IMG/VR virus record: IMGVR_UViG_3300044638_006750
Coordinates: 168,684 to 232,683 of that record
DNA: 64,000 nt
Strand: one strand, 5' to 3'
Below, piece by piece: positions 18,209 through 48,960 of the stretch. Position 1 is the first letter of the stretch, and each line of letters starts with the position of its first letter. Below the pieces are notes generated by a model. The model was given only the letters and a program-made list of their open reading frames with translations, searched no databases and was not told where the DNA came from. The translations under genes and the position numbers were made by a program.

Positions 18209-19457
18209 TAATTTGATTTTTGTACAGATAGCGTCATATCGTGATCCAGAGCTATTGAATACTCTAAGAGATATGATTAATAATGCTGTACATCCAGAAA
18301 ATCTTAGAATCGGTATCGCTTGGCAGCATAGCGATGCAGACAGTTGGGATAAACTTGATGAATTTAAAGATGATTCTAGGTTTAGAATTCTAGACATCAA
18401 TTACAAAGACTCTAAGGGTGTTTGTTGGGCGAGAAATGCCGTTCAACAACTATATGATGGAGAAAAGTACACCCTACAACTAGATTCACACCATAGATTT
18501 GCAAAAGACTGGGATAAAACTTTAATAGATATGCTAGTAGGACTACAAAAGGAAGGCTATGCAAAGCCCCTTATTACTGCATATATACCTAGTTTTGATC
18601 CAGAACATGATCCGGAAAAAAGGGTTCAAGAACCATGGAAAATGAATTTCGATAGATTCATACCCGAGGGCGCAATATTCTTTTTGCCAGCATCTCTTGA
18701 ATCTTTCAACGATAAGGATAGACCTATTAAGGGAAGATTCTATTCTGCTCATTTTGCTTTTACTGTTGGAGAATTTTGTAAAGAAGTTCCACATGATCCT
18801 AATTACTACTTTCATGGAGAAGAAATTAGCATAGCAGTTAGAGCATATACTCATGGTTATGATATATTTCATCCTCATAAAGTTGTTTGCTGGCACGAAT
18901 ATACTAGAAAAGGCAGATCAAAACAATGGGACGATGATCCTGTTTGGCCTCAAAGAAATAATGATTCTCATATGAGAAACAGAAAGTTGTTCGAAATGGA
19001 CGGATTAACAAATGATATTGATTTTGGTCCATGGGGTTTTGGTAAAAAGCGTACAGTAGCAGATTATGAGAAATATGCAGGTATATCGTTTAAGAAAAGA
19101 GCTGTACAAAGATACACATTAGACCATAAAGAGCCGCCAAATCCAACTTATGCCACAGAAGAAGAATATCAAAAATCATTTCTGAATATCTTCAAGCACT
19201 GTATTGATATTGGCTATTCTCAAGTACCCGAAACAGATTATGATTTCTGGTGTGTTGCATTTAAAGATGAAAATGGTCAGGATCTTTATAGACAAGATGC
19301 TGATGAAGCAGAAATTGCAAGAATGAAAAATGATCCTGATGGCTACTGTAAGGTATGGAGAGAGTTTTCTACAGAAGTTAAACCAAAAAGTTGGGTGGTG
19401 TGGCCTCATAGTAGATCAAAAGGCTGGTGTGATATGATTCAAGGAAATCTTCCGTGA
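18180..19457 (+). CDS. GT60/Gnt1-like GlcNAc transferase (Skp1-hydroxyproline GlcNAcT family) with a C-terminal extension
   Basis: IFVQIASYRD, GVCWAR, LQLDSHHRF, FHGEEI and AYTHGYDIFHP. Confidence 0.8.
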   Translation: MKRQRGKKTDNLIFVQIASYRDPELLNTLRDMINNAVHPENLRIGIAWQHSDADSWDKLDEFKDDSRFRILDINYKDSKGVCWARNAVQQLYDGEKYTLQLDSHHRFAKDWDKTLIDMLVGLQKEGYAKPLITAYIPSFDPEHDPEKRVQEPWKMNFDRFIPEGAIFFLPASLESFNDKDRPIKGRFYSAHFAFTVGEFCKEVPHDPNYYFHGEEISIAVRAYTHGYDIFHPHKVVCWHEYTRKGRSKQWDDDPVWPQRNNDSHMRNRKLFEMDGLTNDIDFGPWGFGKKRTVADYEKYAGISFKKRAVQRYTLDHKEPPNPTYATEEEYQKSFLNIFKHCIDIGYSQVPETDYDFWCVAFKDENGQDLYRQDADEAEIARMKNDPDGYCKVWREFSTEVKPKSWVVWPHSRSKGWCDMIQGNLP

Positions 19458-20455
19458 CAAATATAAGATTTCATAGAATTGATAATAAAGCATGGGGAAG
19501 ATATCACGCTATTTGGTTTAGAAAATTTGCCAAATATCTGGAACAATTTTTCAATGTGGAATGGAAAGATTATTTTGATCCAGATAATCAAGTAGCTTCG
19601 TCAAGACTTGAACTACTAAGTGATATTAGAGGTTTTGATCATAATCCTCCATTAAGCGATGTTGATTGTGTTATAGAAAATTTAGATACTAAAAAATTTG
19701 TAGTATTAACATTTACAGAATATTTTAATTCTTATGTTGTACACTATTTAAAATCCCCCAACTGTCAAAAATTATTATCCGCACACTTCAATTATCATAA
19801 TATTTACTATTGGCTTAAAAGAGATAATTTAGTACACAGATTGCCCGACGTTGCACCTTGGTTTTTTGGTTCTATAGACGAATGGGATGTTGCAAAATAT
19901 AGAAATGTCAGAAATGAAACGCCGGTCGAAGAACAAAATACTGCTTTGTTTTGGAAAGGGTCCGGTATAGGCTCTTATAGAAAAGTTATAGAGATCCTTA
20001 GAGATAGACAAGTTTTAGATACTCAAACACTACCATTTGATCTATACATGACAACCTTGGCGAAACAAAAAATAGCTTTAGCATATTATATGGATTTAGA
20101 TAGGTATACTAACCCATACGACTATCCCGGCGAATTTTGTTATAGAGATATGGAATATTGCGCTTTAGGCGTTCCATTTATAAGAATAGAATATAAAGAC
20201 TGTGTACATAATGGCCTAATACAAAATTATCATTATATTAGTATACCAAGAGAAACAGCATACGGTATTTATGAAAAAAATGGCAATGATGGTGTAGCAT
20301 CATTAATAGAAGATAAGTATAATGAGATTATTCAGGATAACGACCTATTGGCTTATATTTCTGGTAATCAAAAACAATGGTTCGATAATTATGCGATGTG
20401 GCCTAATAGTGCAAAATTAGCTATACAACTAACCGGAATAGATCAATGGATTTAA
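19454..20455 (+). CDS. Hypothetical, possibly glycosyltransferase-related
   Basis: C-terminal YRDMEYCALGVPFI...HYISI resembles GT-B acceptor/donor-half motifs. Confidence 0.4.
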   Translation: MTNIRFHRIDNKAWGRYHAIWFRKFAKYLEQFFNVEWKDYFDPDNQVASSRLELLSDIRGFDHNPPLSDVDCVIENLDTKKFVVLTFTEYFNSYVVHYLKSPNCQKLLSAHFNYHNIYYWLKRDNLVHRLPDVAPWFFGSIDEWDVAKYRNVRNETPVEEQNTALFWKGSGIGSYRKVIEILRDRQVLDTQTLPFDLYMTTLAKQKIALAYYMDLDRYTNPYDYPGEFCYRDMEYCALGVPFIRIEYKDCVHNGLIQNYHYISIPRETAYGIYEKNGNDGVASLIEDKYNEIIQDNDLLAYISGNQKQWFDNYAMWPNSAKLAIQLTGIDQWI

Positions 20456-21327
20456 AAAATCTGACCATAACAACATGTTTGTACTATGACCTGTGCGGCA
20501 CCGAATTCGGAGGCAGAGTTCATCCAAGAAATAAATATTTCTATGGACTAGTATCCATGCTCAAAATGGATTCCTCTATTGTTCTCTATTGTTGGGAAAA
20601 AAATATTCAAGAACTGACAGATTTTATAGTATCTCAGTGTGGACCTGATGCCTTAAATAAAATTAAATTTATACCATATGATCTTTATAAGAGTCCTCTT
20701 TATGGTGTGATAAGAACACTAAAAGATCCAGAAGAGCAAAAAAAGTCTGATAGAACATATGATTTAATGCAAGCAAAATTCTTAATGGTCAAAAATACAA
20801 TTGAGAATAATTTTTTTAATACTGACAATTTCTACTATATGGATGTAGGGCTATCCAGCTCTGCATTATTTCCATTTAAGTATCTGCCAATGAAAGACGA
20901 TCCTATGAAGAAGTGGTCGGATTGTTCTTTGTTTAATAATACATTAGTTGATGGACTTATTAATTTAATAGATCCAAATAAAGTAGTCATGTGGAGAATA
21001 TCTGATTGGTTACACTGGATAGACCCGTCTCATCTTAGATCAACTGTTAGAGAATCCATTATTGGTGGTATATTTGGAGGCAAAAAAGAACCCATGATTC
21101 AATATTGTAATGATATAACAGATAGATTTATTGACATGGTTATTAATAAAAAAACCTTGTATTTGGATGAAGTTATTATGACTATAGAACATAATTTTAA
21201 TCCTGACAAATATAAAAAGGTAGATTTTGATGTATGGTATCATGAAGATAGTGGAGATTGGTGTCAGGCGGCAATAGTGGGTAAGAAAAGTTTTTATAAA
21301 ACATTCGAGGAGCTTAATAACATATAA
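20446..21327 (+). CDS. Second HtrL/YibB (WlaTC)-like protein
   Basis: ITTCLY, AKFLMV, FYYMDVG, GGIFGG and LDEVIMT. Confidence 0.65.
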   Translation: MDLKNLTITTCLYYDLCGTEFGGRVHPRNKYFYGLVSMLKMDSSIVLYCWEKNIQELTDFIVSQCGPDALNKIKFIPYDLYKSPLYGVIRTLKDPEEQKKSDRTYDLMQAKFLMVKNTIENNFFNTDNFYYMDVGLSSSALFPFKYLPMKDDPMKKWSDCSLFNNTLVDGLINLIDPNKVVMWRISDWLHWIDPSHLRSTVRESIIGGIFGGKKEPMIQYCNDITDRFIDMVINKKTLYLDEVIMTIEHNFNPDKYKKVDFDVWYHEDSGDWCQAAIVGKKSFYKTFEELNNI

Positions 21328-21992
21328 TGCAAACTGATCATGTAGGAAGAATATTAAATCCAGAGGGTGGATATTTAGACATTAATGGGAAACCAATAAC
21401 AGGATGCTGTGCTTTTGCAGGGATTACTGCTATGCAACACGAAGGAGCGTTTGAAGTTTTTAGGTCTTTATTAGAGACAGTTAGACCTGCCAGAGTTCTC
21501 GAAATAGGAACCGCTGCTGGGGGTCTATGTCTTTACATCAGGCACACATTAAATACTTTAGGTATGTCTGATGTACCGATTAAAACTTTTGATATCTATG
21601 ATACATCTACACATAGGGTTTTAGAAAAAGAAAATAATTTAGAAGTTATTTATACTAATATATTTAGTAAAGATTATTTAAACTTAGAGAATCCTGATCT
21701 AATAGAAACTTTTATTAAATCAGAAGGTACAACGCTAGTTTTGTGTGACGGAGGAAATAAAATCAATGAGTTTAATCTAGTAGCTCCTATGTTGAAATCT
21801 GGAGATATTATTATGGCTCATGATTATTCTCCAAACCTTGAATATTTTAAAGAACACATAATGAATAAGGTGTGGTGCTGGATGGAGATTCAAGATTCTG
21901 ATGTGCAGCAGGCCGTCGATAGTAATAATTTAGAACCTTTTATGGCAACAGAATTTGCTAATGTTGTATGGTTATGTCGTCGCAAAGTATAA
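21327..21992 (+). CDS. SAM-dependent O-methyltransferase (CmcI/Methyltransf_24-like)
   Basis: LEIGTAAGG, VLCDGG and GDIIMAHDY. Confidence 0.7.
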   Translation: MQTDHVGRILNPEGGYLDINGKPITGCCAFAGITAMQHEGAFEVFRSLLETVRPARVLEIGTAAGGLCLYIRHTLNTLGMSDVPIKTFDIYDTSTHRVLEKENNLEVIYTNIFSKDYLNLENPDLIETFIKSEGTTLVLCDGGNKINEFNLVAPMLKSGDIIMAHDYSPNLEYFKEHIMNKVWCWMEIQDSDVQQAVDSNNLEPFMATEFANVVWLCRRKV

Positions 21993-22591
21993 TATCGGAA
22001 GAAGATTTTGCTTCAGTATGTTCAAAATTAACAGATGTTTTTTTTGTTCAAATCGGTGCTAATGATGGTGTGTCGTTTGATCCGATACATGATCTAGTCC
22101 TTCGTTACAACTGGTCCGGTATTCTTGTGGAGCCAGGAGCAGAAGCTTTTGATGCACTAAAACATAATTATTCTGGACGAAGCAATTTAATGTTTTTGAA
22201 TTACGCTATATCAGACCGTGATGGTTTTGTAGAATTATACTGTGGTACTACAACTCCACACTTTACGCTTGATTTTATAAAAGCAAAACATATGTTTGAC
22301 GTTGAACCCAAAGCCGTAAGAGTACCCTGTATGTCTATGAAGACACTTATGAACCGATATGTTAAAAATAACAAGATCGATATATTACAGATAGATGCCG
22401 AAGGTCATGATCATATCATACTGAACGATATGGACTTTGAACAATACTTGCCAAAGATAGTTAGATTTGAGTATGTTTCTATAGGAGACAAATTTTTAAA
22501 TAATTGCTTGACCAAACTATTACATTTCGGGTATACTGTACATTACAGTTCTGATGGTGCGGACGTTATAGCTATAAGAGAAATTAAATGA
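21968..22591 (+). CDS. FkbM-family methyltransferase
   Basis: VQIGANDG, ILVEP, IDILQIDAEGHD and PKIVRFE. Confidence 0.85.
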   Translation: MVMSSQSIISEEDFASVCSKLTDVFFVQIGANDGVSFDPIHDLVLRYNWSGILVEPGAEAFDALKHNYSGRSNLMFLNYAISDRDGFVELYCGTTTPHFTLDFIKAKHMFDVEPKAVRVPCMSMKTLMNRYVKNNKIDILQIDAEGHDHIILNDMDFEQYLPKIVRFEYVSIGDKFLNNCLTKLLHFGYTVHYSSDGADVIAIREIK

Positions 22592-22968
22592 AAATTATAT
22601 CTTGGTCTTTTATTTTTTTACTCATGTTTTCGAATGCATATAGTCAAGAACATGTAAATGTTTTTAGTGGATTGCCATTCGTAGGTATGGCCAATACAGC
22701 ACCAGCTGCCTATAACAACAGTGTATCATCTGTTATAGCGGCAGAGGGAGGCTATGCTATAGATATGAGTCAAGCTTTTATTAATAGTCAAGCTGGCTAT
22801 AGTATGGTTTTAGACAATCATACAAAAAGAATAGACACATACTTTAAAGGCAGAGTTAGTAATGCTTACTATAGAGACATGGAAGAATGGAGAAGATCAG
22901 AAAAAACTAGACTGAAACGACTGGGCCTATGGAATGGTGAGACTATTAGAGATTTATATAGACCATAG
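22588..22968 (+). CDS. Secreted hypothetical protein (signal peptide)
   Basis: MKIISWSFIFLLMFSNAYS is a signal peptide. The SQA.IN...A....DN..K...TYF..R..N..YR pattern recalls planctomycete secreted proteins. Confidence 0.55.
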   Translation: MKIISWSFIFLLMFSNAYSQEHVNVFSGLPFVGMANTAPAAYNNSVSSVIAAEGGYAIDMSQAFINSQAGYSMVLDNHTKRIDTYFKGRVSNAYYRDMEEWRRSEKTRLKRLGLWNGETIRDLYRP

Positions 22969-22970
22969 TC

Positions 22971-23876
22971 TCATGGTGTAGGTTGGATGATTCCATACCC
23001 TTCATATTTTCTTATCCCTTTATGCCTAGTATTTTTTAATTGAATAGCTGTTTTTTTGAATAGCTCTATATAGTCTTCTTTAGTTGTCAGTTGATTACCA
23101 TAGTATGATTTAGCTAATGCTGCACACCCAACAGCAAATGGGTTGCTCATGCTCGTACCGCTCATTTTGGCATAAGTATTTCCTGGGTAGCAGCTTAATA
23201 TATCATGTCCTGGGGCAAGAAAATCTAGCTCGTCTCCGCTACAAGTAAAACTAGTTCTTTCAAAATTACTATCTATCGCCCCAATACTTATTGGATAGTC
23301 GTACTTAGCTGGATACAGTATTTCAGAACTCTCACCAGAGTTACCAGCTGCGCAGAATACAACAATATTTTTGCTTTTAGCAAAATCTATAGCTTTTTCT
23401 AGTCTTGGACTAGGAACAGGTGAACCTAGTGACATTGTAATAAAATCTGCCTTATTATCAATAGCCCAATATATACCTTTGATAATATCTTCATTGCTCC
23501 CCATACCACTATCGTTAAGGGCTTTTATTGGCATAATTTTTGCTTTTGGAGCAACACCAACCATGCCTAATCCATTGTCTGAAGCAGCTATAGTTCCTGC
23601 CACATGTGTTCCATGTCCACATTTATCTATGGGGTCTCTTGATGGCTCTACAAAGTTTACTCCTTGTACTAAGTTATGTTTAAGATCATCATGATCTAAA
23701 TCGCATCCAGTATCTATTACAGCAACAACTATACCATCTCCTTTAGAAAATTTCCAATGATTTTTTATTTTGAATGTTTCTATTTCCCATCCATAAAATT
23801 GGCTGTCTTCTGGTGATAAGCCATATACTGGCTCTACTTCATATGGTAATAATGAATAATTATTTTTTCTTTTCAT
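22971..23876 (-). CDS. Subtilisin-like S8 serine peptidase
   Basis: Catalytic triad motifs VIDTG, HGTHVAG and GTSMSNP; oxyanion AAGN. Confidence 0.93.
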   Translation of the reverse strand: MKRKNNYSLLPYEVEPVYGLSPEDSQFYGWEIETFKIKNHWKFSKGDGIVVAVIDTGCDLDHDDLKHNLVQGVNFVEPSRDPIDKCGHGTHVAGTIAASDNGLGMVGVAPKAKIMPIKALNDSGMGSNEDIIKGIYWAIDNKADFITMSLGSPVPSPRLEKAIDFAKSKNIVVFCAAGNSGESSEILYPAKYDYPISIGAIDSNFERTSFTCSGDELDFLAPGHDILSCYPGNTYAKMSGTSMSNPFAVGCAALAKSYYGNQLTTKEDYIELFKKTAIQLKNTRHKGIRKYEGYGIIQPTP

Positions 23877-24657
23877 GCTTTATAGTCTCTCTTATCCATT
23901 CTTTATATAAGCTTACTCTTGTGTGACAACTCTCATCATTGTATGTAGAATTAGAAGATCCATCATATCCTATAACTGATGAATTAATTCCAGCAAGCCT
24001 GTTATCTATAAAAAGACCACCCCCGCTGTCTCCACTACAAATTAAAAATTCTAGCTCTGTAGGCTTTTGATGCCTTTTAGATGGTGAACAGATCAGTACA
24101 TGTCTTTCTATTTTATCTATAAAGTTCGATCCTGCTCTTCTTAAGCCATCATGTTTTTTGGTGCCAGAATTAAATGTTCCCGTAAAACCCCAACCAGATA
24201 TAGAACATAATTTACCAATTTCATCATCTTCTTCATAAATAGATGGATAAAAATCTAAATCTATAGGATCTTCTATGTATCCTAAAGCTATATCAGCATA
24301 GCCAAAAACATTTGTATCATAATCTTTGTGCATAATCATATTTTTAATATTATATTTATTTTCGCCTATATTTACTGTCCAACTATGACAATTCTCAACA
24401 ACATGTGCAGCTGTTATAATCCAGTGAGGATCTATTACTACGGCAGATCCACAGGACATACCCTTGCCGTCAAAACAACATAATTTCACTACACTATGAA
24501 ACTTAGCTCCATAATCAATATATTTTTGATCTGAAGTATGAGGATCTATTGTTCCAGCAATAGAAAAAATTGATAAAAAATTCCATATGAATAAAGCATA
24601 AATATAAGATTTCATATACCGCTCCTTTTCACACCACTTTGTATATATTATATACAC
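23860..24657 (-). CDS. Trypsin-like S1 serine peptidase (exported)
   Basis: TAAHV, DIAL and GDSGGG; hydrophobic N-terminus from MKSYIYALFIW. Confidence 0.9.
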   Translation of the reverse strand: MYIIYTKWCEKERYMKSYIYALFIWNFLSIFSIAGTIDPHTSDQKYIDYGAKFHSVVKLCCFDGKGMSCGSAVVIDPHWIITAAHVVENCHSWTVNIGENKYNIKNMIMHKDYDTNVFGYADIALGYIEDPIDLDFYPSIYEEDDEIGKLCSISGWGFTGTFNSGTKKHDGLRRAGSNFIDKIERHVLICSPSKRHQKPTELEFLICSGDSGGGLFIDNRLAGINSSVIGYDGSSNSTYNDESCHTRVSLYKEWIRETIKHEKKK

Positions 24658-24688: not shown

Positions 24689-25012
24689 CTATTCTGTTTT
24701 GTATGGTCTGTGTTGTATTTTTTGATTGATTTCATAGCAATCTTCTACTACGGATGAATTCCAACTTTTAAAATCCATTAGATGCCCGAACATAAGATGA
24801 CATTGTTCAGAGCATAATGTAATTAAATTTGATGGATCAAGTTCTCTATTTGGGTCTATGTGTACAGGAACTATGTGGTGTACTTCAAGATTTTTGTTTT
24901 TCCCGCACGCTCTGCATCTAGATTCTTTTTTTAAATGCTCTTTTCTCACCGCCTGCCACTGAGGAGACCTAACAGCGAATCTTAGCTGTTTAGAAAAAAG
25001 TTTATTAAACAT
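24689..25012 (-). CDS. Small HNH endonuclease
   Basis: CRACG...LEVHHI...NLITLC..CH. Confidence 0.85.
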   Translation of the reverse strand: MFNKLFSKQLRFAVRSPQWQAVRKEHLKKESRCRACGKNKNLEVHHIVPVHIDPNRELDPSNLITLCSEQCHLMFGHLMDFKSWNSSVVEDCYEINQKIQHRPYKTE

Positions 25013-25015
25013 AAT

Positions 25016-26017
25016 CTATAATACCTTAGCAGCTATTAAACATCCTTTAGCTACTGCGTGTAATGGATCATTAGCATGTCTTATTTCTTTTATCTCAACA
25101 GGAAATCCATTTTCTTGCATTTTTAATTTAAAATGTTCGATATATCCATCTGCTAACGATGTACCACCAGCAACCACTATGGTTAATGGATTTTTAAATT
25201 TTGGTAGTGATTTATGATTTATTAATGCAGAAGCTAAATTTTTAGTGGTATAGTCTATAAGTCTTTCATAATATGCTGATACAGCAGCCAACACTGGGTT
25301 GTCGCATGTTTCTCCTATTTTAAATCCACCACCTTCTTTTTCAACCTGTACTACACTATCTGGTTCTCCTGTGGCTACAGCACTCATTCTATCAATCCAG
25401 TCGCCGGATTTAGTTGTGGAAAACAAAACTGTTGGTTCGCCATTAAGCATTACACAAACATTAGTCATTCCCGCTCCACAACTAACCCCAATACCTGTAT
25501 AGTCTTCTGATTCTAATTCAGCATAACATAAGGCTTCTGCTTCATTGATAGCTCTAGCATTATAACCACATTCTGCTAAAATAGTTTTAACAACATCTTC
25601 ATGATATCCAACATCAAAATCGTCGTCTTCTTGATCAACTGGTTGTGCTGGGACACAGAATACCAGTTTTTCATTTTCTTCAGATGCTTTACCTGCTACT
25701 TCTTTTAAAATAAAAGCCAAGATTCTTTTTGCGTCTTTTTCTTTAGCCGAAACAACACCTCTATACATAGGTCTTTTAGCGGTATCATTTCTTTCAATAG
25801 CTTTTTCAATAGCATCTTTACCTAATAGAATAAAAGACCCATCTGAGTCTTTAATAAAAACTTTTCCAGTCAATCCTTTTTCTATCATTTTTGTAGCTAC
25901 TGGTGTTGTTGGTTTAATAACATAAAATGCATCTCTAAAATCTTTATATTGCATTTGATTATTATCGTCAGAAGATAATACTATATATGATGTTCCAACA
26001 TCTAAACCTTTAGCCAT
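25016..26017 (-). CDS. Actin-fold ATPase (MreB/MamK/ParM/FtsA superfamily)
   Basis: Phosphate-1 GLDVGTS, connect-1 NEAEA, phosphate-2 SCGAGMTN, adenosine AGGTS and connect-2 AVAKGC. Confidence 0.85.
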   Translation of the reverse strand: MAKGLDVGTSYIVLSSDDNNQMQYKDFRDAFYVIKPTTPVATKMIEKGLTGKVFIKDSDGSFILLGKDAIEKAIERNDTAKRPMYRGVVSAKEKDAKRILAFILKEVAGKASEENEKLVFCVPAQPVDQEDDDFDVGYHEDVVKTILAECGYNARAINEAEALCYAELESEDYTGIGVSCGAGMTNVCVMLNGEPTVLFSTTKSGDWIDRMSAVATGEPDSVVQVEKEGGGFKIGETCDNPVLAAVSAYYERLIDYTTKNLASALINHKSLPKFKNPLTIVVAGGTSLADGYIEHFKLKMQENGFPVEIKEIRHANDPLHAVAKGCLIAAKVL

Positions 26018-26027
26018 AATTTTACCT

Positions 26028-26342
26028 CTAACCTTTCATATTTTTTAGTTTATTGATAGAAGAACCAATATTTTCCTGACTATTCTTAATTTCTCCTAAA
26101 CCTTCATATTTTTTTTCTAATTGATCAGTTTTAATATCTACTACAAATTTACTGTTATCAATTGATATTGGTTGTCCTGTTGATGTATTTTTGATCGACG
26201 ACAATACTTTTGCAGTAGGCGTCTCTTGTTTAAATACACCATCAAAAGACAATAATCTCCCTACTAGTAGTCCTAATAGGAAGATTATTATGTATGAAAA
26301 TATAAAAAGAGTTATTATGGCTATAATTATTATGTTATTCAT
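26028..26342 (-). CDS. Single-pass membrane protein
   Basis: About 30 hydrophobic N-terminal residues followed by a soluble tail. Confidence 0.6.
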   Translation of the reverse strand: MNNIIIIAIITLFIFSYIIIFLLGLLVGRLLSFDGVFKQETPTAKVLSSIKNTSTGQPISIDNSKFVVDIKTDQLEKKYEGLGEIKNSQENIGSSINKLKNMKG

Positions 26343-26405: not shown

Positions 26406-27305
26406 CTATGACTTATAGTTGCCAATAATACGACCTTTCTGTGTACGATGTACATACCCCATACGAATCAGAAAAGGTTCGATACTATTCTCTATGGTCT
26501 CTACTGCAATACCGGTTAATGAAGATATACTCTTTAGTCCAAGAGGATTAGCTCTATTTTTCTTTAGTAGATCTAGGTACATTCTGTCATATACGTCTAA
26601 ACCCATGCTATCAATTCCTTGATTTAAAAACACTTCATCTACATCGGGCTTAATACTTTTATGAAAGCTTGTATAACTCTTGTACCACATTAAACGAGCA
26701 TTAAGTATTCTAGGAGTACCCTTGCTACGTTTTGCTATCTCTAATAATTCATCATCAGATAATTCAAGTCCAAGCTTAACTGCATTCGATCTTGCTAGTT
26801 TAGCTAATTCATCATCATTATAAAAGGAAAGATGTTCTTTGATTTGAAACCTGTCATAAAATGGTTGACTAAGCCTTCCACCACAAGTTGTTGCTCCAAC
26901 CAAGGTAAAAAGAGGGAGTTCTATTAACTCTGGCTTGTTCTCTACTACGATACTAAGAACAAAATCTTCCATTACAGGATAAAGGAATTCTTCTACAACT
27001 TTTGGAAGTCTATGGATCTCATCAATAAACAAAACCGATCTTGGAGCAATACCCATTAGATACGGAAGTAAATTCTTTATACTTCTAACATTCGCCCCAT
27101 TGACCGTATACAGGTTTTCACCCATTTCTGACGCTATGGCACTAGCCACAGTGGTCTTGCCAAGCCCCGGAGGGCCGTCAATTAAAACATGAGGCATCGT
27201 AGAGCCTGTGCTTTTACAACCCGCCACAACGATGCGTAAACGATTTACAACCTCGTCTTGCCCAATGATATCCTCAAACTTAGAAGGGCGAACAATATTA
27301 GCCAT
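26406..27305 (-). CDS. ruvB: Holliday junction branch-migration helicase RuvB
   Basis: RPSKFEDIIGQ, GPPGLGKTT, LFIDEIHRL, GATT, GTPR and IEPFLI...RTQKGR. Start placed at the ATG after GGAGG. Confidence 0.92.
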   Translation of the reverse strand: MANIVRPSKFEDIIGQDEVVNRLRIVVAGCKSTGSTMPHVLIDGPPGLGKTTVASAIASEMGENLYTVNGANVRSIKNLLPYLMGIAPRSVLFIDEIHRLPKVVEEFLYPVMEDFVLSIVVENKPELIELPLFTLVGATTCGGRLSQPFYDRFQIKEHLSFYNDDELAKLARSNAVKLGLELSDDELLEIAKRSKGTPRILNARLMWYKSYTSFHKSIKPDVDEVFLNQGIDSMGLDVYDRMYLDLLKKNRANPLGLKSISSLTGIAVETIENSIEPFLIRMGYVHRTQKGRIIGNYKS

Positions 27306-27696
27306 TTTTACCTCCAATAGTAACCAAAATATTCTTAATTAGTGACGCCGTATCAGATGTTGGATTGCTTGCATGAGCTTCTGCTACTATAGTTTTAGCT
27401 TCTGAAGCTTTGAATCCATACCCAACTAGAATTTTAACACACTGACCCAGGTCGGCCAATGTCGTTTCTTTTACTACTTTTTGTGTGTTCGTCTTAGCTG
27501 ATTTTTTATCATATAGAATCTCTATATTGCTAATTCTTTTTGGTTTTAGCATAGTTTTACAATCACAAACTATAATAAAACCTTTGGTCTGGGATTCTGC
27601 CAGAGAAAGCCAATGTTCTACAGAACATACTGGACACGTATATTTACAGTGTACGTTTAGCTCAGTCGGTTTCAGGTTTTTGATTTTCTTGTTCAT
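27298..27696 (-). CDS. Zn-ribbon protein with a RuvA C-terminal (domain III)-like tail
   Basis: CPVC...CDC at the N-terminus; the C-terminal CVKILVGYGFKASEAKTIV...TASLIKNIL matches the RuvA-CTD pattern L..LGf...EA..........li+.al. Directly upstream of ruvB. Confidence 0.6.
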   Translation of the reverse strand: MNKKIKNLKPTELNVHCKYTCPVCSVEHWLSLAESQTKGFIIVCDCKTMLKPKRISNIEILYDKKSAKTNTQKVVKETTLADLGQCVKILVGYGFKASEAKTIVAEAHASNPTSDTASLIKNILVTIGGKNG

Positions 27697-29806: not shown

Positions 29807-30661
29807 TCAGTTATAATACTCCGCATCGGGATCATAATCTTCATCTTCATCGTCAAACTGATCCCAGTAACTTTCATCATAGTCATTTAGATATTCATCG
29901 TCATCGTCGTTGTAATCATCCTCGTCAAAATCACTCTTATAGAGAGGCTTGAGAAGCTCTCCTTGATATTCGCCAACAACCTCATAACGACAAGTACGAA
30001 GTTTCTCGCAATTGCAATCTGTAGGAACGCTGACTACATCCTTGGGATTAATCTTGACGATTACAATCTTATCTCCAGCATCTAGACTACCATAACTAGC
30101 AACATAGTTAAGTGCGCCTGCATGAAGACCATTTGAACAACCTCGACCACGATCATCATCAACTTTTGCCCTAGTCATTTCACAAATATCACCAACCTTG
30201 TTACGGAATTTACCGGCATACTTATCCATATAGTCTCCACGTACTGCCTTATACGCAAGAAAATAACCATCTTCTGTAATTGGCAAATACTGATGCTCCA
30301 AGAAATCATACAGTTCCTTCTGACTTTGCATACTTGGATTTTCCATAAGATTATTTAGGAAATTTACAAGAGGCTCAAAAGGCAATCCCTTACTCATAAA
30401 CTCCAAAATACGCTTACTGATAGCACCGTGAACTTCTTCTCCTTCATAATAGACCTTGCCATTCTTGATCTCGACAAGACCCTGACTAAAGGAAGCAACA
30501 GCTTTTTGAATATCGACAAGCTCAGTCAACTCATCTTCTGTAGCCGATGAAAGCTTCTCCATAATCAGCCTATAGTTAATATGATCCGGCAAAACCTGAT
30601 GAGCCTTATTGTTAAGGATTAGTGTCAGATTTCCATCAACCCACATAAAAGGAACGCTCAT
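29807..30661 (-). CDS. rIIB: rIIB-like protein
   Basis: ITEDGYFLAYKAV, VDDD....CSNGLHAG and KINPKDVVSVPTD...KLRTCRYEV. Confidence 0.88.
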   Translation of the reverse strand: MSVPFMWVDGNLTLILNNKAHQVLPDHINYRLIMEKLSSATEDELTELVDIQKAVASFSQGLVEIKNGKVYYEGEEVHGAISKRILEFMSKGLPFEPLVNFLNNLMENPSMQSQKELYDFLEHQYLPITEDGYFLAYKAVRGDYMDKYAGKFRNKVGDICEMTRAKVDDDRGRGCSNGLHAGALNYVASYGSLDAGDKIVIVKINPKDVVSVPTDCNCEKLRTCRYEVVGEYQGELLKPLYKSDFDEDDYNDDDDEYLNDYDESYWDQFDDEDEDYDPDAEYYN

Positions 30662-30684: not shown

Positions 30685-33330
30685 TCAAACAATTGTCTTA
30701 CTTACCAGTTTTCTGAATGACTCCGTATCATTCATTTTATAGCTCCAACTATTAGGACCATGATAGTATGTGCTTCTAAATGCTGACAACGGATTATCAT
30801 TAGTAAGTTCTCTCAAGTTGCCGTTGACCTCATGGCTACACACAATATACTTCAACATCGGCTGGTTGTCAAGAGCCTCTTTAATCTGCTTTCGCAACTC
30901 ATCGATTTTTATCAATTTATCTTTCAAAGATCCGTCTGGCTTAATAGCCTTCTGGATAGATGTATCATCCGAATAGAGTTCCTTAACCCACCTATTTAGG
31001 TGAAGATAAGCAACATTAGCATCACGAATTTCATTACTATTGATCCCATTGATGCCGATCTTATTAAGAATCTTAGTCATATGGGCAAAGTAATCAGATT
31101 GCTTAAATTTGGCAATATCAAACTTGTTTCTGTGAATGGTATCTGCAAAGAACTCCATGATCATACAATGATCGACCAAATCTACAATCTTGGTATCGGA
31201 AATACTAGAAGCATAATCCAGACCAAAGATATTCAGTATGTGCCAGAGAAACTGCCTATCGGTATAGTTTCTATTATAGTACGAATCTCTATTCTCTTGT
31301 TTATTAAACTCTTCCTTGGCATACTCAACAAGACCATTATAGACAGAAACATCCTTGAATTTATTTGCATAAACCGATTCCAGTTTAGACTTCATAAAAT
31401 CATTAAAATTAATTAGGTTGTATCCTTCTTTGATCAACTTTTGAGCATAGCTTTCCTTAATAGCATAGATATTAGTATCTCCATATAGACTCTTAATGAG
31501 ATCTTTACAAGACTCATCTTTGGTCATTCTGCTGATATCTCTAACAGCAGGATAACCTTGTACAGAACCATATCTTAGAATTGGCACATACACAATATCT
31601 TCTTCGTCAAGAACACTATCTCGCTCATCTTGATCAGTAATTTCTCTCATATAATGAGAGTCGTTCATAGTACCAGACAGAGCCTTGGCACTCGACAGAC
31701 TACCATGAATCAGAAAGATATTATCAACACTAACACTGCCAGCGGGATCACGACTACCAGTTTTGCGTGGGCCGTTACTAAGCAGACTCTTATACTGTGA
31801 TACCAATACTACATTAGATTCTCCACCAATATCCTTGATGATATCGTCAAAACCTTCTGTAGAATCTTCTGGAGTATCGCTATCAATCATTAAATAAGCA
31901 AAGCAGTTATTTTGATTACAGTATTTAGTAACAATTTTCTTTGCTGTTTCAGCACCCTTAACATCAGATCGGAAAAATACCATCTTCCCAGTTTTACGAT
32001 TGGCATTATCCCAATAATAAGAACCTCTTCCGCTAAGAGTTTCATGATGAATTTTATCTGTGAGATAAATCATCCTACGACTACGATATCCAGCAGTTCT
32101 AAAATTGAACACATAAAACTGCTTACTCTTCTTAAACTTGTATTCAAGATCCTTACCGCTTTGAAGATCATAAACCTTACCATTACTATCAGTCCATGAT
32201 GCCCCAGCAGTCCATCCTCCTGCAATATCACTAAGATTATAGTAGGTGGTATATGCTTCAACCAGACTATTAGCATTAGCAAGTTTGTCTGTCATATCTT
32301 GATTGAGTTGCAAATAAATATCTTGTGTACGTTCACGCAGGGTTTTAATAACTTGCTTAGTGTATTGCAAACCCTCACGACTAACATCCATCTCCAATTC
32401 ACCAATGCCAAATTGGATCTCCAAATAAAGACCTTGGTTGAGAATCTCACGCACAAGATTCTTCCAGTTGTCTACGTCGGCCTTACGAAAAGCCCTGTTC
32501 CATGCTTGAATATGATCCGGTTGATCTGGCTTTTCTTCTCCGACAATCTTATTAGCATCAACAGGATAAGCAATATTACCCATAATTGCAACAATACCAC
32601 TACTGATATTATTATGGTTACTTGGATACTTACTACTATCACTAGCGATTCTTCCGATCTTCCAACCAGTACCTTCAATCACAATATTGTTATGAGAATA
32701 TGATCCGTCATTGATAGAGTTACAAACACCACCCTCAATAATTGGCTTTAGCTTAAAATAATGATAAATCCTCTTGCTTTTCTGAGTAAATTCCCAATGG
32801 TCATTTTGTTTAACCGCAAAAGTAATTTCAAGACCATTTGGTTCATTGGTTTTTGTAATACTAACAAGATTCAAACTCGGAACTCCATTCTCATCCATCG
32901 CTGCAATATATGTCAGTTTTTGTCCATCATAATAAGAGATAGTAGTAAAACTCTTAGTATAGGCAAAGGGACTCTTAGAACCTAGACCAAGACAACCAAC
33001 AAAATCATTGCTAGTATTTTTATTACTCGCACCATAAGTAGTATACAGTTCCTCCATATCTGCTTGACTAAGACCAGTACCATAGTCACGCACAGTAAAA
33101 GAAGGATTGGCCTGTGTAGGCAGAATCACCTTAAAAGGATTCTTGTTTCCCGCTGCAATATGAGCATCATATGCATTAGTAGACAACTCACGCACAACAG
33201 CCATAACCTTGTCGGAATAAAGAGAGTCCGACAAAATCTTAAACATTTTGCTTGTCTGTGCGATGCTGAATTGATTAGCACTCTGAACACCAGACGAATG
33301 GATTTCAACTGTCCTATCTGCCAACTTCAT
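30685..33330 (-). CDS. rIIA: rIIA-like protein (N-terminal GHKL/HATPase domain)
   Basis: LSDSLYSDK..AVVRELSTNAYDA, VRDYGTG and GCLGLGSKSPFAYT; upstream of rIIB. Confidence 0.88.
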   Translation of the reverse strand: MKLADRTVEIHSSGVQSANQFSIAQTSKMFKILSDSLYSDKVMAVVRELSTNAYDAHIAAGNKNPFKVILPTQANPSFTVRDYGTGLSQADMEELYTTYGASNKNTSNDFVGCLGLGSKSPFAYTKSFTTISYYDGQKLTYIAAMDENGVPSLNLVSITKTNEPNGLEITFAVKQNDHWEFTQKSKRIYHYFKLKPIIEGGVCNSINDGSYSHNNIVIEGTGWKIGRIASDSSKYPSNHNNISSGIVAIMGNIAYPVDANKIVGEEKPDQPDHIQAWNRAFRKADVDNWKNLVREILNQGLYLEIQFGIGELEMDVSREGLQYTKQVIKTLRERTQDIYLQLNQDMTDKLANANSLVEAYTTYYNLSDIAGGWTAGASWTDSNGKVYDLQSGKDLEYKFKKSKQFYVFNFRTAGYRSRRMIYLTDKIHHETLSGRGSYYWDNANRKTGKMVFFRSDVKGAETAKKIVTKYCNQNNCFAYLMIDSDTPEDSTEGFDDIIKDIGGESNVVLVSQYKSLLSNGPRKTGSRDPAGSVSVDNIFLIHGSLSSAKALSGTMNDSHYMREITDQDERDSVLDEEDIVYVPILRYGSVQGYPAVRDISRMTKDESCKDLIKSLYGDTNIYAIKESYAQKLIKEGYNLINFNDFMKSKLESVYANKFKDVSVYNGLVEYAKEEFNKQENRDSYYNRNYTDRQFLWHILNIFGLDYASSISDTKIVDLVDHCMIMEFFADTIHRNKFDIAKFKQSDYFAHMTKILNKIGINGINSNEIRDANVAYLHLNRWVKELYSDDTSIQKAIKPDGSLKDKLIKIDELRKQIKEALDNQPMLKYIVCSHEVNGNLRELTNDNPLSAFRSTYYHGPNSWSYKMNDTESFRKLVSKTIV

Positions 33331-36351: not shown

Positions 36352-36425
36352 CTTTCCATCTCCTGAGTGTAGTCTAGTTCTGATTTACACCGAAGATGAA
36401 AATATCTACCATTTATCCTACATAG

Positions 36426-36510
36426 TACCGGGGGCGGGATTCGAACCCGCAGCGTTTCTTATGTGAGGGATTTTAAGTCCCTTGCGTTTCGCCAATTTCG
36501 CCACCCCGGC
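36426..36510 (-). tRNA. trnL: tRNA-Leu(UAA), CCA not encoded
   Basis: GCCGGGG/CCCCGGT acceptor stem, AGGGA-CTTAAAA-TCCCT anticodon arm, long variable region and GCGGG-TTCGAAT-CCCGC T arm; followed by CTA. Confidence 0.93.
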
Positions 36511-48593: not shown

Positions 48594-48608
48594 ATAATAT
48601 GCTTTAAG

Positions 48609-48960
48609 TGGAGGCGAGGGGAGTCGAACCCCTGTCCTATCAGTAGTTCATTATATCTTCTACAAGTTTAGGTTGTTCATAAGTTTTATGAAAGATTAAA
48701 GAACAAACAACATTCATCTTTCCGTACCAACTAATCTCAGGCTAGAACCCGTTGGCAATTCTAGCAGCCGAAGGCTTTTACGACGATTTTTTGGACGCTA
48801 CCTTCATTGCTTCCTAAAATCGTTACTGCTTTTTATTAAGCAGCAAGTGCTAACTGATTTGCGCCAGTTAAAGCGTTTAATCTGGTTTTATAGTAGCCAC
48901 CAGATCAACTACTACTTGCCAATATAAATCTGCTATTGTAGTCGAAACCTTTACGCCCCC
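48609..48960 (-). ncRNA. ssrA: tmRNA, tag peptide (A)GANQLALAA
   Basis: 5' GGGGGCGTAAAGGTTTCGAC; 3' GGGGTTCGACTCCCCTCGCCTCCA; G3-U pair; tag ORF 48865-48833 after TTTAACT, ending TAA TAA; CCA not encoded. Confidence 0.95.

What the first reader, a model, noticed from the sequence alone, without database searches (positions are those of the whole stretch)
25016..26342. Phage-encoded actin-fold ATPase with an adjacent membrane anchor
All five actin ATPase motifs are recognisable in a 333-aa protein directly downstream of a single-TM gene and of ruvB. Phage cytoskeletons are mostly tubulin (PhuZ); actin-like examples such as corynephage AlpC are rare. This could be a filament with a membrane tether that positions replicating or recombining DNA in a compartmentalised planctomycete cell.
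Basis: partly seen in the sequence, partly recalled or inferred. Interest (0 to 1): 0.72.

Follow-up and report, generated by a model that had tools for sequence, protein, structure and literature searches.

The report
Jumbo-phage volactin-type actin with membrane adaptor
An uncultured freshwater jumbo phage encodes its own, very strongly conserved actin-like protein of the volactin family. Directly upstream lies a small membrane protein whose conserved tail probably docks onto it, so the virus may build a membrane-tethered cytoskeleton of a kind not yet studied in any phage.

Summary
ORF 25016-26017(-) encodes a 333-aa actin-fold protein. It matches Pfam PF25216 (Volactin) end to end (E 1.9e-63), and its AlphaFold model has pLDDT 96. 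The nearest solved relatives are the filament formers MamK, BeeR and MreB, not EutJ or sugar kinases.

The gene sits in a complete 232.7-kb, 35% GC lake phage genome. That genome has rIIA/rIIB and a terminase but no tubulin.

The 104-aa gene upstream (26028-26342) has an N-terminal transmembrane helix and a cytoplasmic tail. It directly precedes the actin gene in 76 of 80 related IMG/VR loci and lies upstream in all 80, while ruvB, HNH and protease genes move around.

The actin is the slowest-evolving gene locally (dN 0.12, against 0.23 to 0.47 for its neighbours).

The adaptor's C-terminal peptide (INKLKNM) recurs at the end of the gene upstream of volactin-family genes in 9 of 14 lineages, including bacterial genomes. 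It occurs in only 1 of 585 ORFs in this phage. Co-folding gives weak support for binding (0.51 against 0.00 for controls).

Filament formation and the biological role (DNA positioning or envelope/protease coupling) are inferred, not shown. A planctomycete host is unsupported. No paper in the library describes a phage volactin.

The parts
25016..26017 (-). Actin-like ATPase gene (333 aa), phage subfamily of the Volactin family PF25216
   Evidence: Pfam Volactin E 1.9e-63, full length. AF2 pLDDT 96.3. Foldseek top hits are MamK, BeeR and MreB. Family-profile search of PDB sequences gives MamK at 1e-16. Lowest dN of the neighbourhood.
25979..26008 (-). Phosphate-1 motif GLDVGTSYIV (D6, G8 invariant in the family)
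25451..25498 (-). Phosphate-2 motif TGIGVSCGAGMTNVCV. The family has Ser179 where MamK, BeeR and MreB have Asp. Inteins insert in this loop in relatives.
25391..25408 (-). SGDWID motif (G205, D206, D209 invariant). It aligns with AGNYVD of MamK and GGDKMD of MreB. A second intein insertion site lies here in relatives.
25142..25177 (-). Adenosine motif VVAGGTSLADGY (G284, G285 invariant)
26018..26027 (-). 10-nt spacer with a GAGG-type ribosome-binding site that overlaps the adaptor's stop codon. The adaptor and actin genes are probably read as one operon.
   Evidence: No convincing promoter or terminator lies between the genes.
26028..26342 (-). Adaptor gene (104 aa): bitopic membrane protein with a very short external N-terminus, one TM helix and a cytoplasmic tail
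   Evidence: No Pfam, PHROG, NCBIfam or PADLOC hit. A homologue lies upstream of the actin gene in 80/80 IMG/VR loci, directly adjacent in 76.
26253..26333 (-). Transmembrane helix (residues 4-30). It is hydrophobic but poorly conserved in sequence.
   Evidence: Kyte-Doolittle maximum 3.16. Alignment. The first basic residue lies on the C-terminal side. The signal-peptide-protease-TM-tail fusions in L039 and L056 put the tail in the cytoplasm.
26031..26168 (-). Conserved cytoplasmic tail (residues 59-104)
   Evidence: Alignment A2: I27, V33, I36, I58, K64, L65 invariant and 12 further columns at 90% or more. Tail residues 47-69 contact both actin copies in the co-fold.
26037..26057 (-). C-terminal peptide INKLKNM, the proposed actin-docking motif ([ILVMA]x[KR]L[KR]x[ILVM])
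   Evidence: Found at the C-terminus of the gene upstream of volactin-family genes in 9 of 14 lineages. Background is 1 of 585 ORFs in this genome, and that one is this gene.
26406..27317 (-). RuvB-like AAA+ helicase: a neighbour, not part of the conserved two-gene module
   Evidence: Pfam RuvB_N, AAA_lid_4 and RuvB_C. Its position relative to the actin gene varies among loci.
24689..25012 (-). HNH endonuclease gene, a variable neighbour
   Evidence: Pfam HNH E 1.6e-8. Present in 48/80 loci at varying positions.
23860..24657 (-). Secreted trypsin-like S1 protease. It is linked to the module through gene fusions in related phages.
   Evidence: Pfam Trypsin E 5.7e-19. N-terminal hydrophobic signal-like segment. 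Fused in frame to the TM+tail in L039 and L056.
22971..23876 (-). Subtilisin-like S8 protease, a frequent neighbour
   Evidence: PADLOC subtilase model E 2.5e-23. The homologue in L082 carries Peptidase_S8. Present in 41/80 loci.

Best explanation
A two-gene cytoskeletal module of an uncultured freshwater jumbo phage.

The 333-aa protein is a nucleotide-binding actin homologue of the Volactin family. It most likely polymerises into filaments, as H. volcanii volactin does in vivo. This step is inferred.

The protein has no membrane-targeting helix of its own. The 104-aa product of the co-transcribed upstream gene is a bitopic inner-membrane protein with a 3-residue N-terminus outside and its tail inside. 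Its conserved C-terminal peptide (...SSINKLKNMKG) docks onto the actin. This is inferred from comparative data, with weak support from co-folding. Filaments would thereby be tethered to the cytoplasmic face of the membrane.

The logic resembles ParR-ParM, MamJ-MamK or RodZ-MreB: a constant actin-binding tail on an adaptor whose other end is exchangeable. In this phage group that other end is a bare TM anchor. In sister lineages it is a periplasmic trypsin-like protease followed by a TM helix. In other phages and in bacteria it is a coiled coil.

What the tethered filament organises is not shown. The two best candidates are membrane-linked positioning of phage DNA replication or recombination, and transmembrane coupling to the phage's secreted proteases or the host envelope.
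For: Family and fold:
- Pfam Volactin scores 215 bits over its full length; MreB_Mbl falls below its cut-off.
- NCBIfam gives only sub-threshold hits, all to actin-like filament families (salactin, BeeR, MamK, MreB).
- The AF2 model has pLDDT 96.3. The Foldseek PDB ranking is MamK (TM 0.73), then BeeR, then MreB, with EutJ at rank 26.
- The family profile against PDB sequences gives MamK 1e-16, BeeR 2e-10, MreB 1e-8, FtsA 3e-6 and EutJ 1.5e-3.
- It is 35% identical over its full length to a haloarchaeal volactin homologue.
- Volactin forms dynamic filaments that touch the membrane by their tips in H. volcanii (PMC10869688).

Selection:
- Actin dN is 0.12, against RuvB 0.23, HNH 0.32, trypsin 0.42 and the adaptor 0.47, with synonymous sites saturated.
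- Inteins sit in the phosphate-2 loop and the SGDWID motif of relatives.

Module:
- An adaptor homologue lies upstream in 80/80 loci and directly adjacent in 76, while other neighbours shuffle.
- The spacer is 10 nt and carries an RBS.
- The tail is conserved while the TM helix and linker are variable.

Topology:
- The positive-inside distribution fits a cytoplasmic tail.
- A 382-aa fusion of signal peptide, trypsin, TM helix and tail is retained across two lineages that are only 47% identical.

Docking motif:
- It is present in 9 of 14 lineages, including bacterial genomes, against 1/585 ORFs in the phage genome. In the other loci 8/190 ORFs carry it, and 7 of those are the upstream partners.

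Co-fold:
- ipSAE is 0.51 with a best control of 0.00, and the conserved tail contacts both actin copies.

Other:
- The genome has no tubulin and no second actin.
Against: - No experiment exists on any phage member. Polymerisation rests on family membership alone.
- The phosphate-2 Asp is replaced by Ser, so the ATPase chemistry may differ from MamK or MreB.
- By the co-fold tool's own calibration, a pass at this score is 'weak support... more often wrong than right unless the guess was likely beforehand', and it was run with my own alignments.
- The motif's regular expression was written after seeing most of the positive cases. Of three lineages looked at afterwards, only one matched (L102 yes; L101 and L111 no).
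- Three phage lineages lack a motif-bearing upstream gene: L086, which has ClpP upstream, L087 and L088.
- Metatranscriptome contigs cover relatives of the actin gene, but DNA carry-over cannot be excluded.
Confidence: 0.55

Rival explanations
1. DNA-positioning system (a functional reading of the same module). The membrane-tethered filaments hold or move replicating or recombining phage DNA. This would resemble ParM/AlpC-type segregation, or phi29, whose small bitopic protein p16.7 and host MreB organise membrane-associated replication.
For: - The module lies in a block of DNA-metabolism genes: ruvB, a RuvA domain III-like ORF, HNH, and DNA ligase further on.
- Cellular family members are fused to a ParB-type HTH (P0146, P0174) or to HU-type DNA-binding domains (Atlas cluster). 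The family is therefore repeatedly wired to DNA.
- The tail is basic, with pI about 9.
Against: - The phage adaptor has no recognisable DNA-binding domain.
- ruvB is not a fixed neighbour.
- No centromere-like repeat was looked for or seen.
- The conserved motif also occurs in partners of quite different architecture, which fits actin binding better than DNA binding.
Confidence: 0.25
2. Envelope or protease coupling (RodZ-MreB-like). The cytoplasmic filament positions or clusters periplasmic phage proteases, or reshapes or enlarges the host cell, through the transmembrane adaptor.
For: - A secreted trypsin-like protease lies within 6 kb in 72/80 loci, and an S8 protease in 41/80.
- In two diverged lineages the protease is fused in frame to the TM+tail adaptor directly upstream of the actin gene.
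- More distant phage relatives have ClpP-like or trypsin-like genes beside the actin gene.
- Volactin itself acts in cell-shape transitions.
Against: - In this window the adaptor has only about three extracytoplasmic residues, so no periplasmic cargo is attached.
- The protease link could simply reflect shared timing of expression.
- The function of the proteases is unknown.
Confidence: 0.2
3. A non-polymerising, membrane-associated actin-fold scaffold or ATPase, like PilM bound to the PilN peptide or FtsA, rather than a dynamic filament.
For: - PilM and FtsA are also actin-fold proteins that bind a short cytoplasmic peptide of an adjacent bitopic membrane protein.
- PilM, FtsA and EutJ appear among the structural and profile hits.
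- The phosphate-2 Asp is replaced by Ser.
Against: - PilM aligns much worse (TM about 0.52, rmsd about 10 A) than MamK or MreB (TM 0.65-0.73).
- The best sequence-profile relatives are all filament formers.
- The founding family member, which has the same Ser variant, polymerises in vivo.
Confidence: 0.12
4. The 104-aa gene is functionally unrelated to the actin (for example a holin, spanin-like or superinfection-exclusion membrane protein), and adjacency reflects only tight phage gene packing.
For: - The adaptor has no family annotation.
- The co-fold support is only weak.
Against: - Adjacency holds in 80/80 loci while all other neighbours rearrange.
- The C-terminal motif recurs upstream of volactin-family genes in unrelated phages and in bacteria.
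- Its topology, with the tail in the cytoplasm, is wrong for an i-spanin.
Confidence: 0.08

Closest known systems
Volactin (VolA, HVO_2015) of Haloferax volcanii; Pfam PF25216
   Same: Same Pfam family, with a full-length match. It is 35% identical to a Halogeometricum volactin homologue and shares the same variant phosphate-2 motif (S-x-G-A-G-M-T-N). Volactin filaments are dynamic and touch the membrane by their tips (PMC10869688), which is what a membrane adaptor would produce.
   Different: - This protein is viral, is a bare 333-aa actin domain, and sits in a separate clade of ~330-aa phage-context proteins in a midpoint-rooted FastTree.
- The partner is a 104-aa TM protein.
- Volactin's partners are unknown, and its role (the rod-to-disk transition) cannot apply to a phage as such.
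MamK (with MamJ) and BeeR
   Same: Nearest solved structures and nearest families by sequence profile. Both are filament-forming bacterial actins that work with adaptor proteins.
   Different: Only 17-19% identity. The NCBIfam MamK and BeeR models score 22-27 bits against cut-offs of 400-530. There is no magnetosome context.
ParM-ParR-parC and AlpC-AlpA (prophage CGP3 of Corynebacterium glutamicum, PMC4446434)
   Same: An actin-like ATPase encoded next to a small adaptor whose terminal peptide is proposed to bind the filament. AlpC is the one studied phage-encoded actin, and it supports viral DNA replication.
   Different: There is no sequence-family relation: no ParM/StbA or ALP Pfam hit at E<=0.01. 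The adaptor here is a membrane protein without a DNA-binding fold. No centromere has been identified.
MreB-RodZ
   Same: A cytoplasmic actin filament bound by the cytoplasmic domain of a bitopic membrane protein that can reach into the periplasm. MreB is among the closest structures.
   Different: MreB_Mbl scores 25.6 bits, below its cut-off of 27, and TIGR00904 scores 17 against 366. RodZ binds through an N-terminal HTH domain, not a C-terminal peptide. MreB also has its own membrane-binding elements.
PilM-PilN and FtsA-FtsN
   Same: An actin-fold protein plus the short cytoplasmic peptide of an adjacent single-pass membrane protein.
   Different: In those systems the peptide is N-terminal. 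PilM is structurally much more distant (TM about 0.52), and those proteins are not cytomotive filaments.
phi29 p16.7 with host MreB; PhuZ tubulin of nucleus-forming jumbo phages
   Same: Phage strategies that use a cytoskeleton, and in phi29 a small bitopic membrane protein, to organise replication in space. This comparison rests on established knowledge of those systems, not on a test made here.
   Different: Here the phage brings its own actin rather than using the host's. The genome has no tubulin, and its terminase and rIIA are at most 36% identical to those of any cultured phage.

Membership tests
Actin/ASKHA fold, cytomotive-actin branch | Five nucleotide-binding motifs (phosphate 1, connect 1, phosphate 2, adenosine, connect 2) in order | tested here: met
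   All five were located, and the invariant residues D6, G8, E159, G181, G183, G284, G285 and G325 hold across 53 family members. The phosphate-2 Asp is Ser.
Actin/ASKHA fold, cytomotive-actin branch | Four-subdomain actin fold, closest to filament formers rather than to kinases or EutJ | tested here: met
   The AF2 model (pLDDT 96) searched against PDB gives MamK TM 0.73, BeeR 0.73 and MreB 0.62-0.69, with EutJ at rank 26 and TM 0.53. The family profile gives MamK 1e-16 against EutJ 1.5e-3.
Actin/ASKHA fold, cytomotive-actin branch | Nucleotide-dependent polymerisation into filaments | not testable with these tools
   This needs biochemistry or imaging. It is inferred only from family membership.
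Volactin family (Pfam PF25216) | Score above the curated gathering threshold over the whole domain | tested here: met
   215.3 bits against a cut-off of 35, covering profile positions 1-321/321. The same search rings over the cut-off in only one of 14 control genomes; Haloferax volcanii is among the four listed hits.
Volactin family (Pfam PF25216) | Family-specific motif variants (S-x-G-A-G-M-x-N phosphate 2; RPM..G; SGDWID) | tested here: met
   Shared with the Halogeometricum and Planctomycetota homologues.
Volactin family (Pfam PF25216) | Orthology with haloarchaeal VolA (same clade, same role in the disk-shape transition) | tested here: not met
   In the FastTree of 125 domains, the phage protein falls in a clade of ~330-aa proteins whose sampled contexts are phage contigs. 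That clade is separate from the clade holding the acidic and multidomain cellular proteins. The tree is midpoint-rooted and support values were not inspected.
MreB/Mbl (PF06723, TIGR00904) | HMM score above the curated cut-off | tested here: not met
   25.6 bits against 27 (Pfam, partial match) and 16.9 against 365.75 (TIGR00904). The whole-genome search with PF06723 finds nothing.
MamK (NF040964), BeeR (NF053558), salactin (NF053533) | HMM score above the curated cut-off | tested here: not met
   22.1/400, 26.9/530 and 31.7/400 bits respectively.
ParM/StbA and Alp families (type II partition) | Match to the ParM/StbA or ALP profiles | tested here: not met
   The Pfam scan at E<=0.01 reports only Volactin and MreB_Mbl.
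ParMRC-like logic (adaptor-actin pair) | An adjacent adaptor whose terminal peptide binds the actin | tested here: inconclusive
   Synteny holds in 80/80 loci. The C-terminal motif is present in 9/14 lineages against 1/585 ORFs as background. The co-fold gives ipSAE 0.51 against 0.00, rated 'weak support'.
ParMRC-like logic (adaptor-actin pair) | A centromere-like DNA site bound by the adaptor | not tested
   No repeat search was done around the module. The adaptor has no DNA-binding domain hit.
PilM-PilN type | An N-terminal cytoplasmic peptide of the membrane partner binds the actin-fold protein, with close structural match to PilM | tested here: not met
   The partner's cytoplasmic part is C-terminal. 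PilM aligns at TM about 0.52 and rmsd about 10 A.

The most novel reading that the evidence does not exclude
Volactin-family actins in phages, bacteria and archaea may work as a general adaptor-actin system. The upstream partner would dock through a C-terminal phi-x-K-L-K-x-phi peptide and carry an exchangeable cargo end. An abundant lineage of lake jumbo phages would then have turned this into a virus-built, transmembrane-coupled actin cytoskeleton. Tethered to the inner membrane, and in some lineages directly to a periplasmic protease, it would organise infection (DNA factories or envelope remodelling) from inside the host cell. If so, this is the first viral actin cytoskeleton of this kind, and it points directly to the so far unknown volactin-binding factors of cellular organisms.
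Probability: 0.2. Interest if true: 0.85.

Novelty: new variant of a known kind. Interest (0 to 1): 0.62.

Why it matters
Studied phage cytoskeletons are essentially tubulins (PhuZ, TubZ) plus one prophage actin (AlpC).

This actin belongs to a different, recently named family. It is carried by a widespread, uncultured lineage of ~230-kb lake phages: 318 IMG/VR loci and about 2,000 protein clusters at 90% identity. It is the most strongly conserved gene in its neighbourhood, and it always comes with a membrane adaptor.

The held literature does not mention phage volactins, and that includes a 224-genome jumbo-phage comparison and a 2026 review. No close relative appears among the viral structures of BFVD.

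The analysis also gives a concrete prediction that can be tested by mutation: a short C-terminal peptide on the upstream gene product is the actin-binding handle. This prediction extends to bacterial (Planctomycetota-type) members of the family. The discoverers of volactin explicitly noted that its binding factors are unknown.

Tried and rejected
- A single-sequence search of PDB sequences found nothing; only the family profile reached MamK, BeeR and MreB.
- PHROGs has no family for either gene. PADLOC has none either, so there is no sign of a defence or anti-defence role.
- Megablast of 12 kb against GenBank phages gave no match. By tblastn, only two unannotated huge-phage metagenome records carry a 34%-identical homologue.
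- 'Relatives' cannot be drawn for a virus record.
- Host identification was tried in several ways:
  - A degenerate pattern for the exact tmRNA tag found no genome.
  - A single-protein scan found five short MAG contigs from five differently labelled bins, probably mis-binned phage DNA.
  - The terminase and rIIA have no close cultured relative.
  - The host therefore stays unresolved. There are only weak hints towards Bacteroidota (35% GC; tag GANQLALAA against GENNYALAA in a Flavobacteriales MAG), and nothing points to Planctomycetota.
- Expression: four lake metatranscriptomes hold 150-730-nt contigs that are 80-90% identical to the actin gene, and one contig also reaches the adaptor's 3' end. 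However, DNA carry-over and contig chimerism cannot be excluded.
- I considered a fused N-terminal membrane anchor in longer relatives. None has a TM segment in its extension.
- I considered an i-spanin or holin reading for the 104-aa protein and rejected it on topology.
- A phylogeny with MreB, ParM and FtsA outgroups was not built, because no tool-supplied reference sequences were at hand. Curated HMM cut-offs and profile and structure rankings were used instead.
Full report
**What is there**

The window is the last 64 kb of a single 232,683-bp IMG/VR virus record. It is 35% GC, its two ends overlap by about 365 bp, and CheckV rates it complete.

On the minus strand the genes run in this order: rIIA (30685-33330), rIIB (29807-30661), four small ORFs, ruvB (26406-27317), a 104-aa ORF (26028-26342), a 333-aa ORF (25016-26017), an HNH endonuclease, a trypsin-like protease and an S8 protease. 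The last of the four small ORFs has a RuvA domain III-like C-terminus.

**The 333-aa protein**

- It matches Pfam PF25216 (Volactin) from end to end: E 1.9e-63, 215 bits against a cut-off of 35. MreB_Mbl is only a partial hit below its threshold.
- NCBIfam reports only far sub-threshold hits, all to actin-like filament families: salactin, BeeR, MamK and MreB.
- An AlphaFold2 model built on 53 family members has pLDDT 96.3 and pTM 0.93.
- Its best solved-structure matches are MamK (TM 0.73), BeeR and many MreB entries. EutJ and PilM come well behind.
- A profile of the family finds MamK (1e-16), BeeR (2e-10), MreB (1e-8), FtsA (3e-6) and only then EutJ (1.5e-3) among PDB sequences.
- All five actin motifs are present with family-invariant glycines and acidic residues.
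- The HMMER alignment to MamK, BeeR and MreB shows that the phosphate-2 Asp of those proteins is Ser179 here. The same holds in 90% or more of the sampled family, including a haloarchaeal volactin homologue that is 35% identical over the full length.
- The founding member, H. volcanii volactin, forms dynamic filaments that span the cytoplasm and touch the membrane by their tips (PMC10869688).

The protein therefore does not group with non-filament ASKHA enzymes. Polymerisation itself remains an inference.

**How widespread and how constrained**

- The word-indexed search finds 1,956 homologues, and the best 120 are all 82-91% identical.
- The exhaustive search of 50%-identity representatives finds 954 clusters, 271 of them at E<=1e-30.
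- IMG/VR holds 318 loci. The DNA is present in lake and freshwater metagenomes sequenced from 2016 to 2025.
- Against 79 related loci, the actin has a median dN of 0.12 while synonymous sites are saturated (dS about 1.5). The corresponding dN values are 0.23 for RuvB, 0.32 for HNH, 0.42 for the trypsin-like protease and 0.47 for the 104-aa protein.
- Relatives carry inteins at three or more sites within the phosphate-2 loop and the SGDWID motif. This is typical of conserved functional sites in phage genes.
- The genome has a large terminase but no tubulin and no second actin.
- Its terminase and rIIA are at most 36% identical to those of any cultured phage.

**The 104-aa protein**

It has one very hydrophobic segment (residues 4-30) and no family hit in any library.

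In all 80 IMG/VR loci fetched, a homologue lies upstream of the actin gene. In 76 of them it ends 0-14 nt before the actin start. The other four have an insertion of about 600 nt. Meanwhile ruvB, HNH and the proteases change place or are absent. In the window the spacer is 10 nt and carries a GAGG ribosome-binding site that overlaps the stop codon.

The alignment shows three parts: a TM helix of variable sequence, a variable linker, and a strongly conserved C-terminal stretch of about 45 residues that ends in NKLKNMKG or NKLKNMKR.

Topology rests on two observations:
- The first basic residues follow the helix.
- In two lineages (L039 and L056, only 47% identical to each other), a single 382-aa ORF reads signal peptide, trypsin-like protease, TM helix, then the conserved tail, directly upstream of the actin gene. 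An exported protease domain followed by one TM helix puts the tail in the cytoplasm.

**A shared docking peptide**

I looked at the gene immediately upstream of volactin-family genes in more distant lineages. The same kind of C-terminal peptide ([ILVMA]x[KR]L[KR]x[ILVM] within the last 25 residues) turned up repeatedly:

| Locus | Peptide | Partner / context |
|---|---|---|
| L082 | INKLKEL | TM protein, phage, 52%-identical actin |
| L084 | VSKLRNL | 245-aa coiled coil, phage |
| L089 | IDKLRQL | upstream gene product, no TM segment, phage-type contig |
| L090 | AKRLRDI | upstream gene product, no TM segment, phage-type contig |
| L100 | IKKLRDL | truncated upstream ORF, short metagenome contig |
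| L097 | VERLKQI | cellular contig with paired volactin genes |
| L099 | LDRLKSL | cellular contig with paired volactin genes |
| L102 | LNKLKSM | 236-aa coiled coil overlapping the start of a volactin gene whose protein NCBI assigns to a Planctomycetota MAG |

The peptide is absent upstream in L086 (ClpP upstream), L087 (near miss), L088, L101 (Halogeometricum, where the upstream gene is a 4-TM CdpA_N-domain protein) and L111. L112 could not be tested. The tally is 9 of 14 lineages.

As background, 1 of 585 ORFs of 60 aa or more in this phage genome has the peptide, and that one is the adaptor. In the other loci 8 of 190 ORFs have it, and 7 of those are the upstream partners. The pattern was written after most of the positives had been seen. 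Of the three testable lineages examined afterwards, one matched. The enrichment is therefore real but its exact size is overstated.

Co-folding two actin copies with the 70-residue tail gave ipSAE 0.51 (three runs: 0.46-0.53) against 0.00 for all three controls. Tail residues 47-69 touch both actin copies. The tool rates this as 'weak support'.

**Reading**

The best-supported picture is an adaptor-actin module. The filament-forming actin has no membrane-binding element of its own. It is tethered to the inner membrane by a co-expressed bitopic protein through that protein's conserved cytoplasmic tail.

The adaptor's other end is exchangeable. It is a bare anchor in this phage, a periplasmic protease in sister lineages, and a coiled coil in other phages and in bacteria.

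What the filament organises is open, and two ideas have some support:
- **DNA positioning.** The module lies among DNA-metabolism genes. Cellular family members are fused to ParB-type HTH domains or HU-type domains.
- **Envelope or protease coupling.** This rests on the protease fusions and on the near-constant presence of secreted proteases nearby.

A PilM-like non-filament scaffold, and a functionally unrelated neighbour gene, are less likely but not excluded.

**Host**

Nothing supports a planctomycete host. The phage is low in GC and comes from lakes. Five short GTDB MAG contigs carry close copies. They come from bins labelled Chitinophagia, Flavobacteriales, Alphaproteobacteria, unclassified and Thermoplasmatales, and are probably mis-binned phage fragments.

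The phage's own tmRNA tag, GANQLALAA, is not found in any GTDB genome. It resembles the GENNYALAA tag of the Flavobacteriales MAG in length, in its Gly start and in its ALAA end. These are weak hints towards Bacteroidota and no more than that.

**Known or new**

- The family is known (Pfam). NCBI names some Planctomycetota proteins 'disk-shape morphogenesis protein volactin'. The ESM Atlas has automatically named 'Volactin domain-containing' clusters made up of Uroviricota proteins.
- None of the 14 listed of the 17 library papers that mention volactin deals with phages, judging by title and abstract.
- Searches for phage-encoded actins return only AlpC and plasmid-prophage ParM-type systems.
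- A 224-genome jumbo-phage comparison and a 2026 review of jumbo-phage biology do not mention a phage actin.
- BFVD has no close structural relative; the best matches are viral Hsp70s at TM about 0.6.
- GenBank phages hold only two unannotated huge-phage records with a 34%-identical homologue.

I therefore rate this a new variant of a known kind: a viral, membrane-adaptor-linked branch of the volactin family, with a testable docking-peptide hypothesis.

Metatranscriptome contigs at 80-90% identity cover the actin gene in four lake RNA libraries but do not prove transcription.

Noticed in passing
window 48608-48960 (-): The phage encodes a tmRNA with tag peptide GANQLALAA. No GTDB species genome encodes exactly this tag. 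A Flavobacteriales MAG has GENNYALAA, which has the same length, the same Gly start and the same ALAA end.
   Followed up: partly
window 36425-36510 (-): tRNA-Leu (anticodon TAA), the only tRNA gene in the window.
   Followed up: no
window 27298-27696 (-): A 132-aa ORF overlaps the start of ruvB. It has a Cys-rich (zinc-ribbon-like) N-terminus and a C-terminus that weakly matches RuvA domain III, the RuvB-binding domain (Pfam RuvA_C E 4e-3; TIGR00084 positions 145-201, E 6e-4). It may be a minimal RuvA-like partner for the phage RuvB.
   Followed up: partly
L039:4848-5996 and L056:1285-2433: In two diverged sister lineages the secreted trypsin-like protease is fused in frame to the TM helix and conserved tail of the adaptor. 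The result is a 382-aa ORF directly upstream of the actin gene, and the two versions are 47% identical.
   Followed up: yes
proteins P0122, P0130, P0143, P0152, P0250, P0253, P0267 (relatives): Volactin-family genes of other phages carry LAGLIDADG inteins at three or more different sites: after Ser179 and after Gly181 of the phosphate-2 loop, and after Lys203 just before the SGDWID motif.
   Followed up: yes
proteins P0146, P0174, P0125, P0138, P0180; Atlas clusters: Cellular family members occur in several fused forms: with an N-terminal ParB-type HTH, with an HU-type DNA-binding domain, as tandem double-actin proteins, and joined to a Wzz/GNVR/ParA-like tyrosine-kinase module.
   Followed up: partly
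L101:1800-2699 (Halogeometricum borinquense): The gene upstream of a haloarchaeal volactin homologue encodes a 4-TM protein with a CdpA_N domain. CdpA anchors the haloarchaeal division ring. This protein lacks the KLK-type C-terminal peptide, and a 300-nt gap separates the two genes.
   Followed up: no
L097 and L099: In cellular contigs, volactin-family genes come in adjacent pairs (381 + 517 aa; 338 + 654 aa), preceded by a coiled-coil partner gene of about 330 aa.
   Followed up: no
window 16550-22968 (+): A plus-strand island of glycosyltransferase and methyltransferase-like genes interrupts the otherwise minus-strand gene array and coincides with a reversal of GC skew. Further glycosyltransferase-like genes lie at 6259-8421.
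   Followed up: no
window 42001-44000: There is a local GC minimum (24%) over two large ORFs (41160-43058 and 42989-44254) that have no PHROG match.
   Followed up: no
L108 (G003:C23): The Flavobacteriales MAG that carries a copy of the actin gene holds a second tmRNA with tag ADTSVLALAA on another contig. This may be another phage-derived or contaminating sequence.
   Followed up: no
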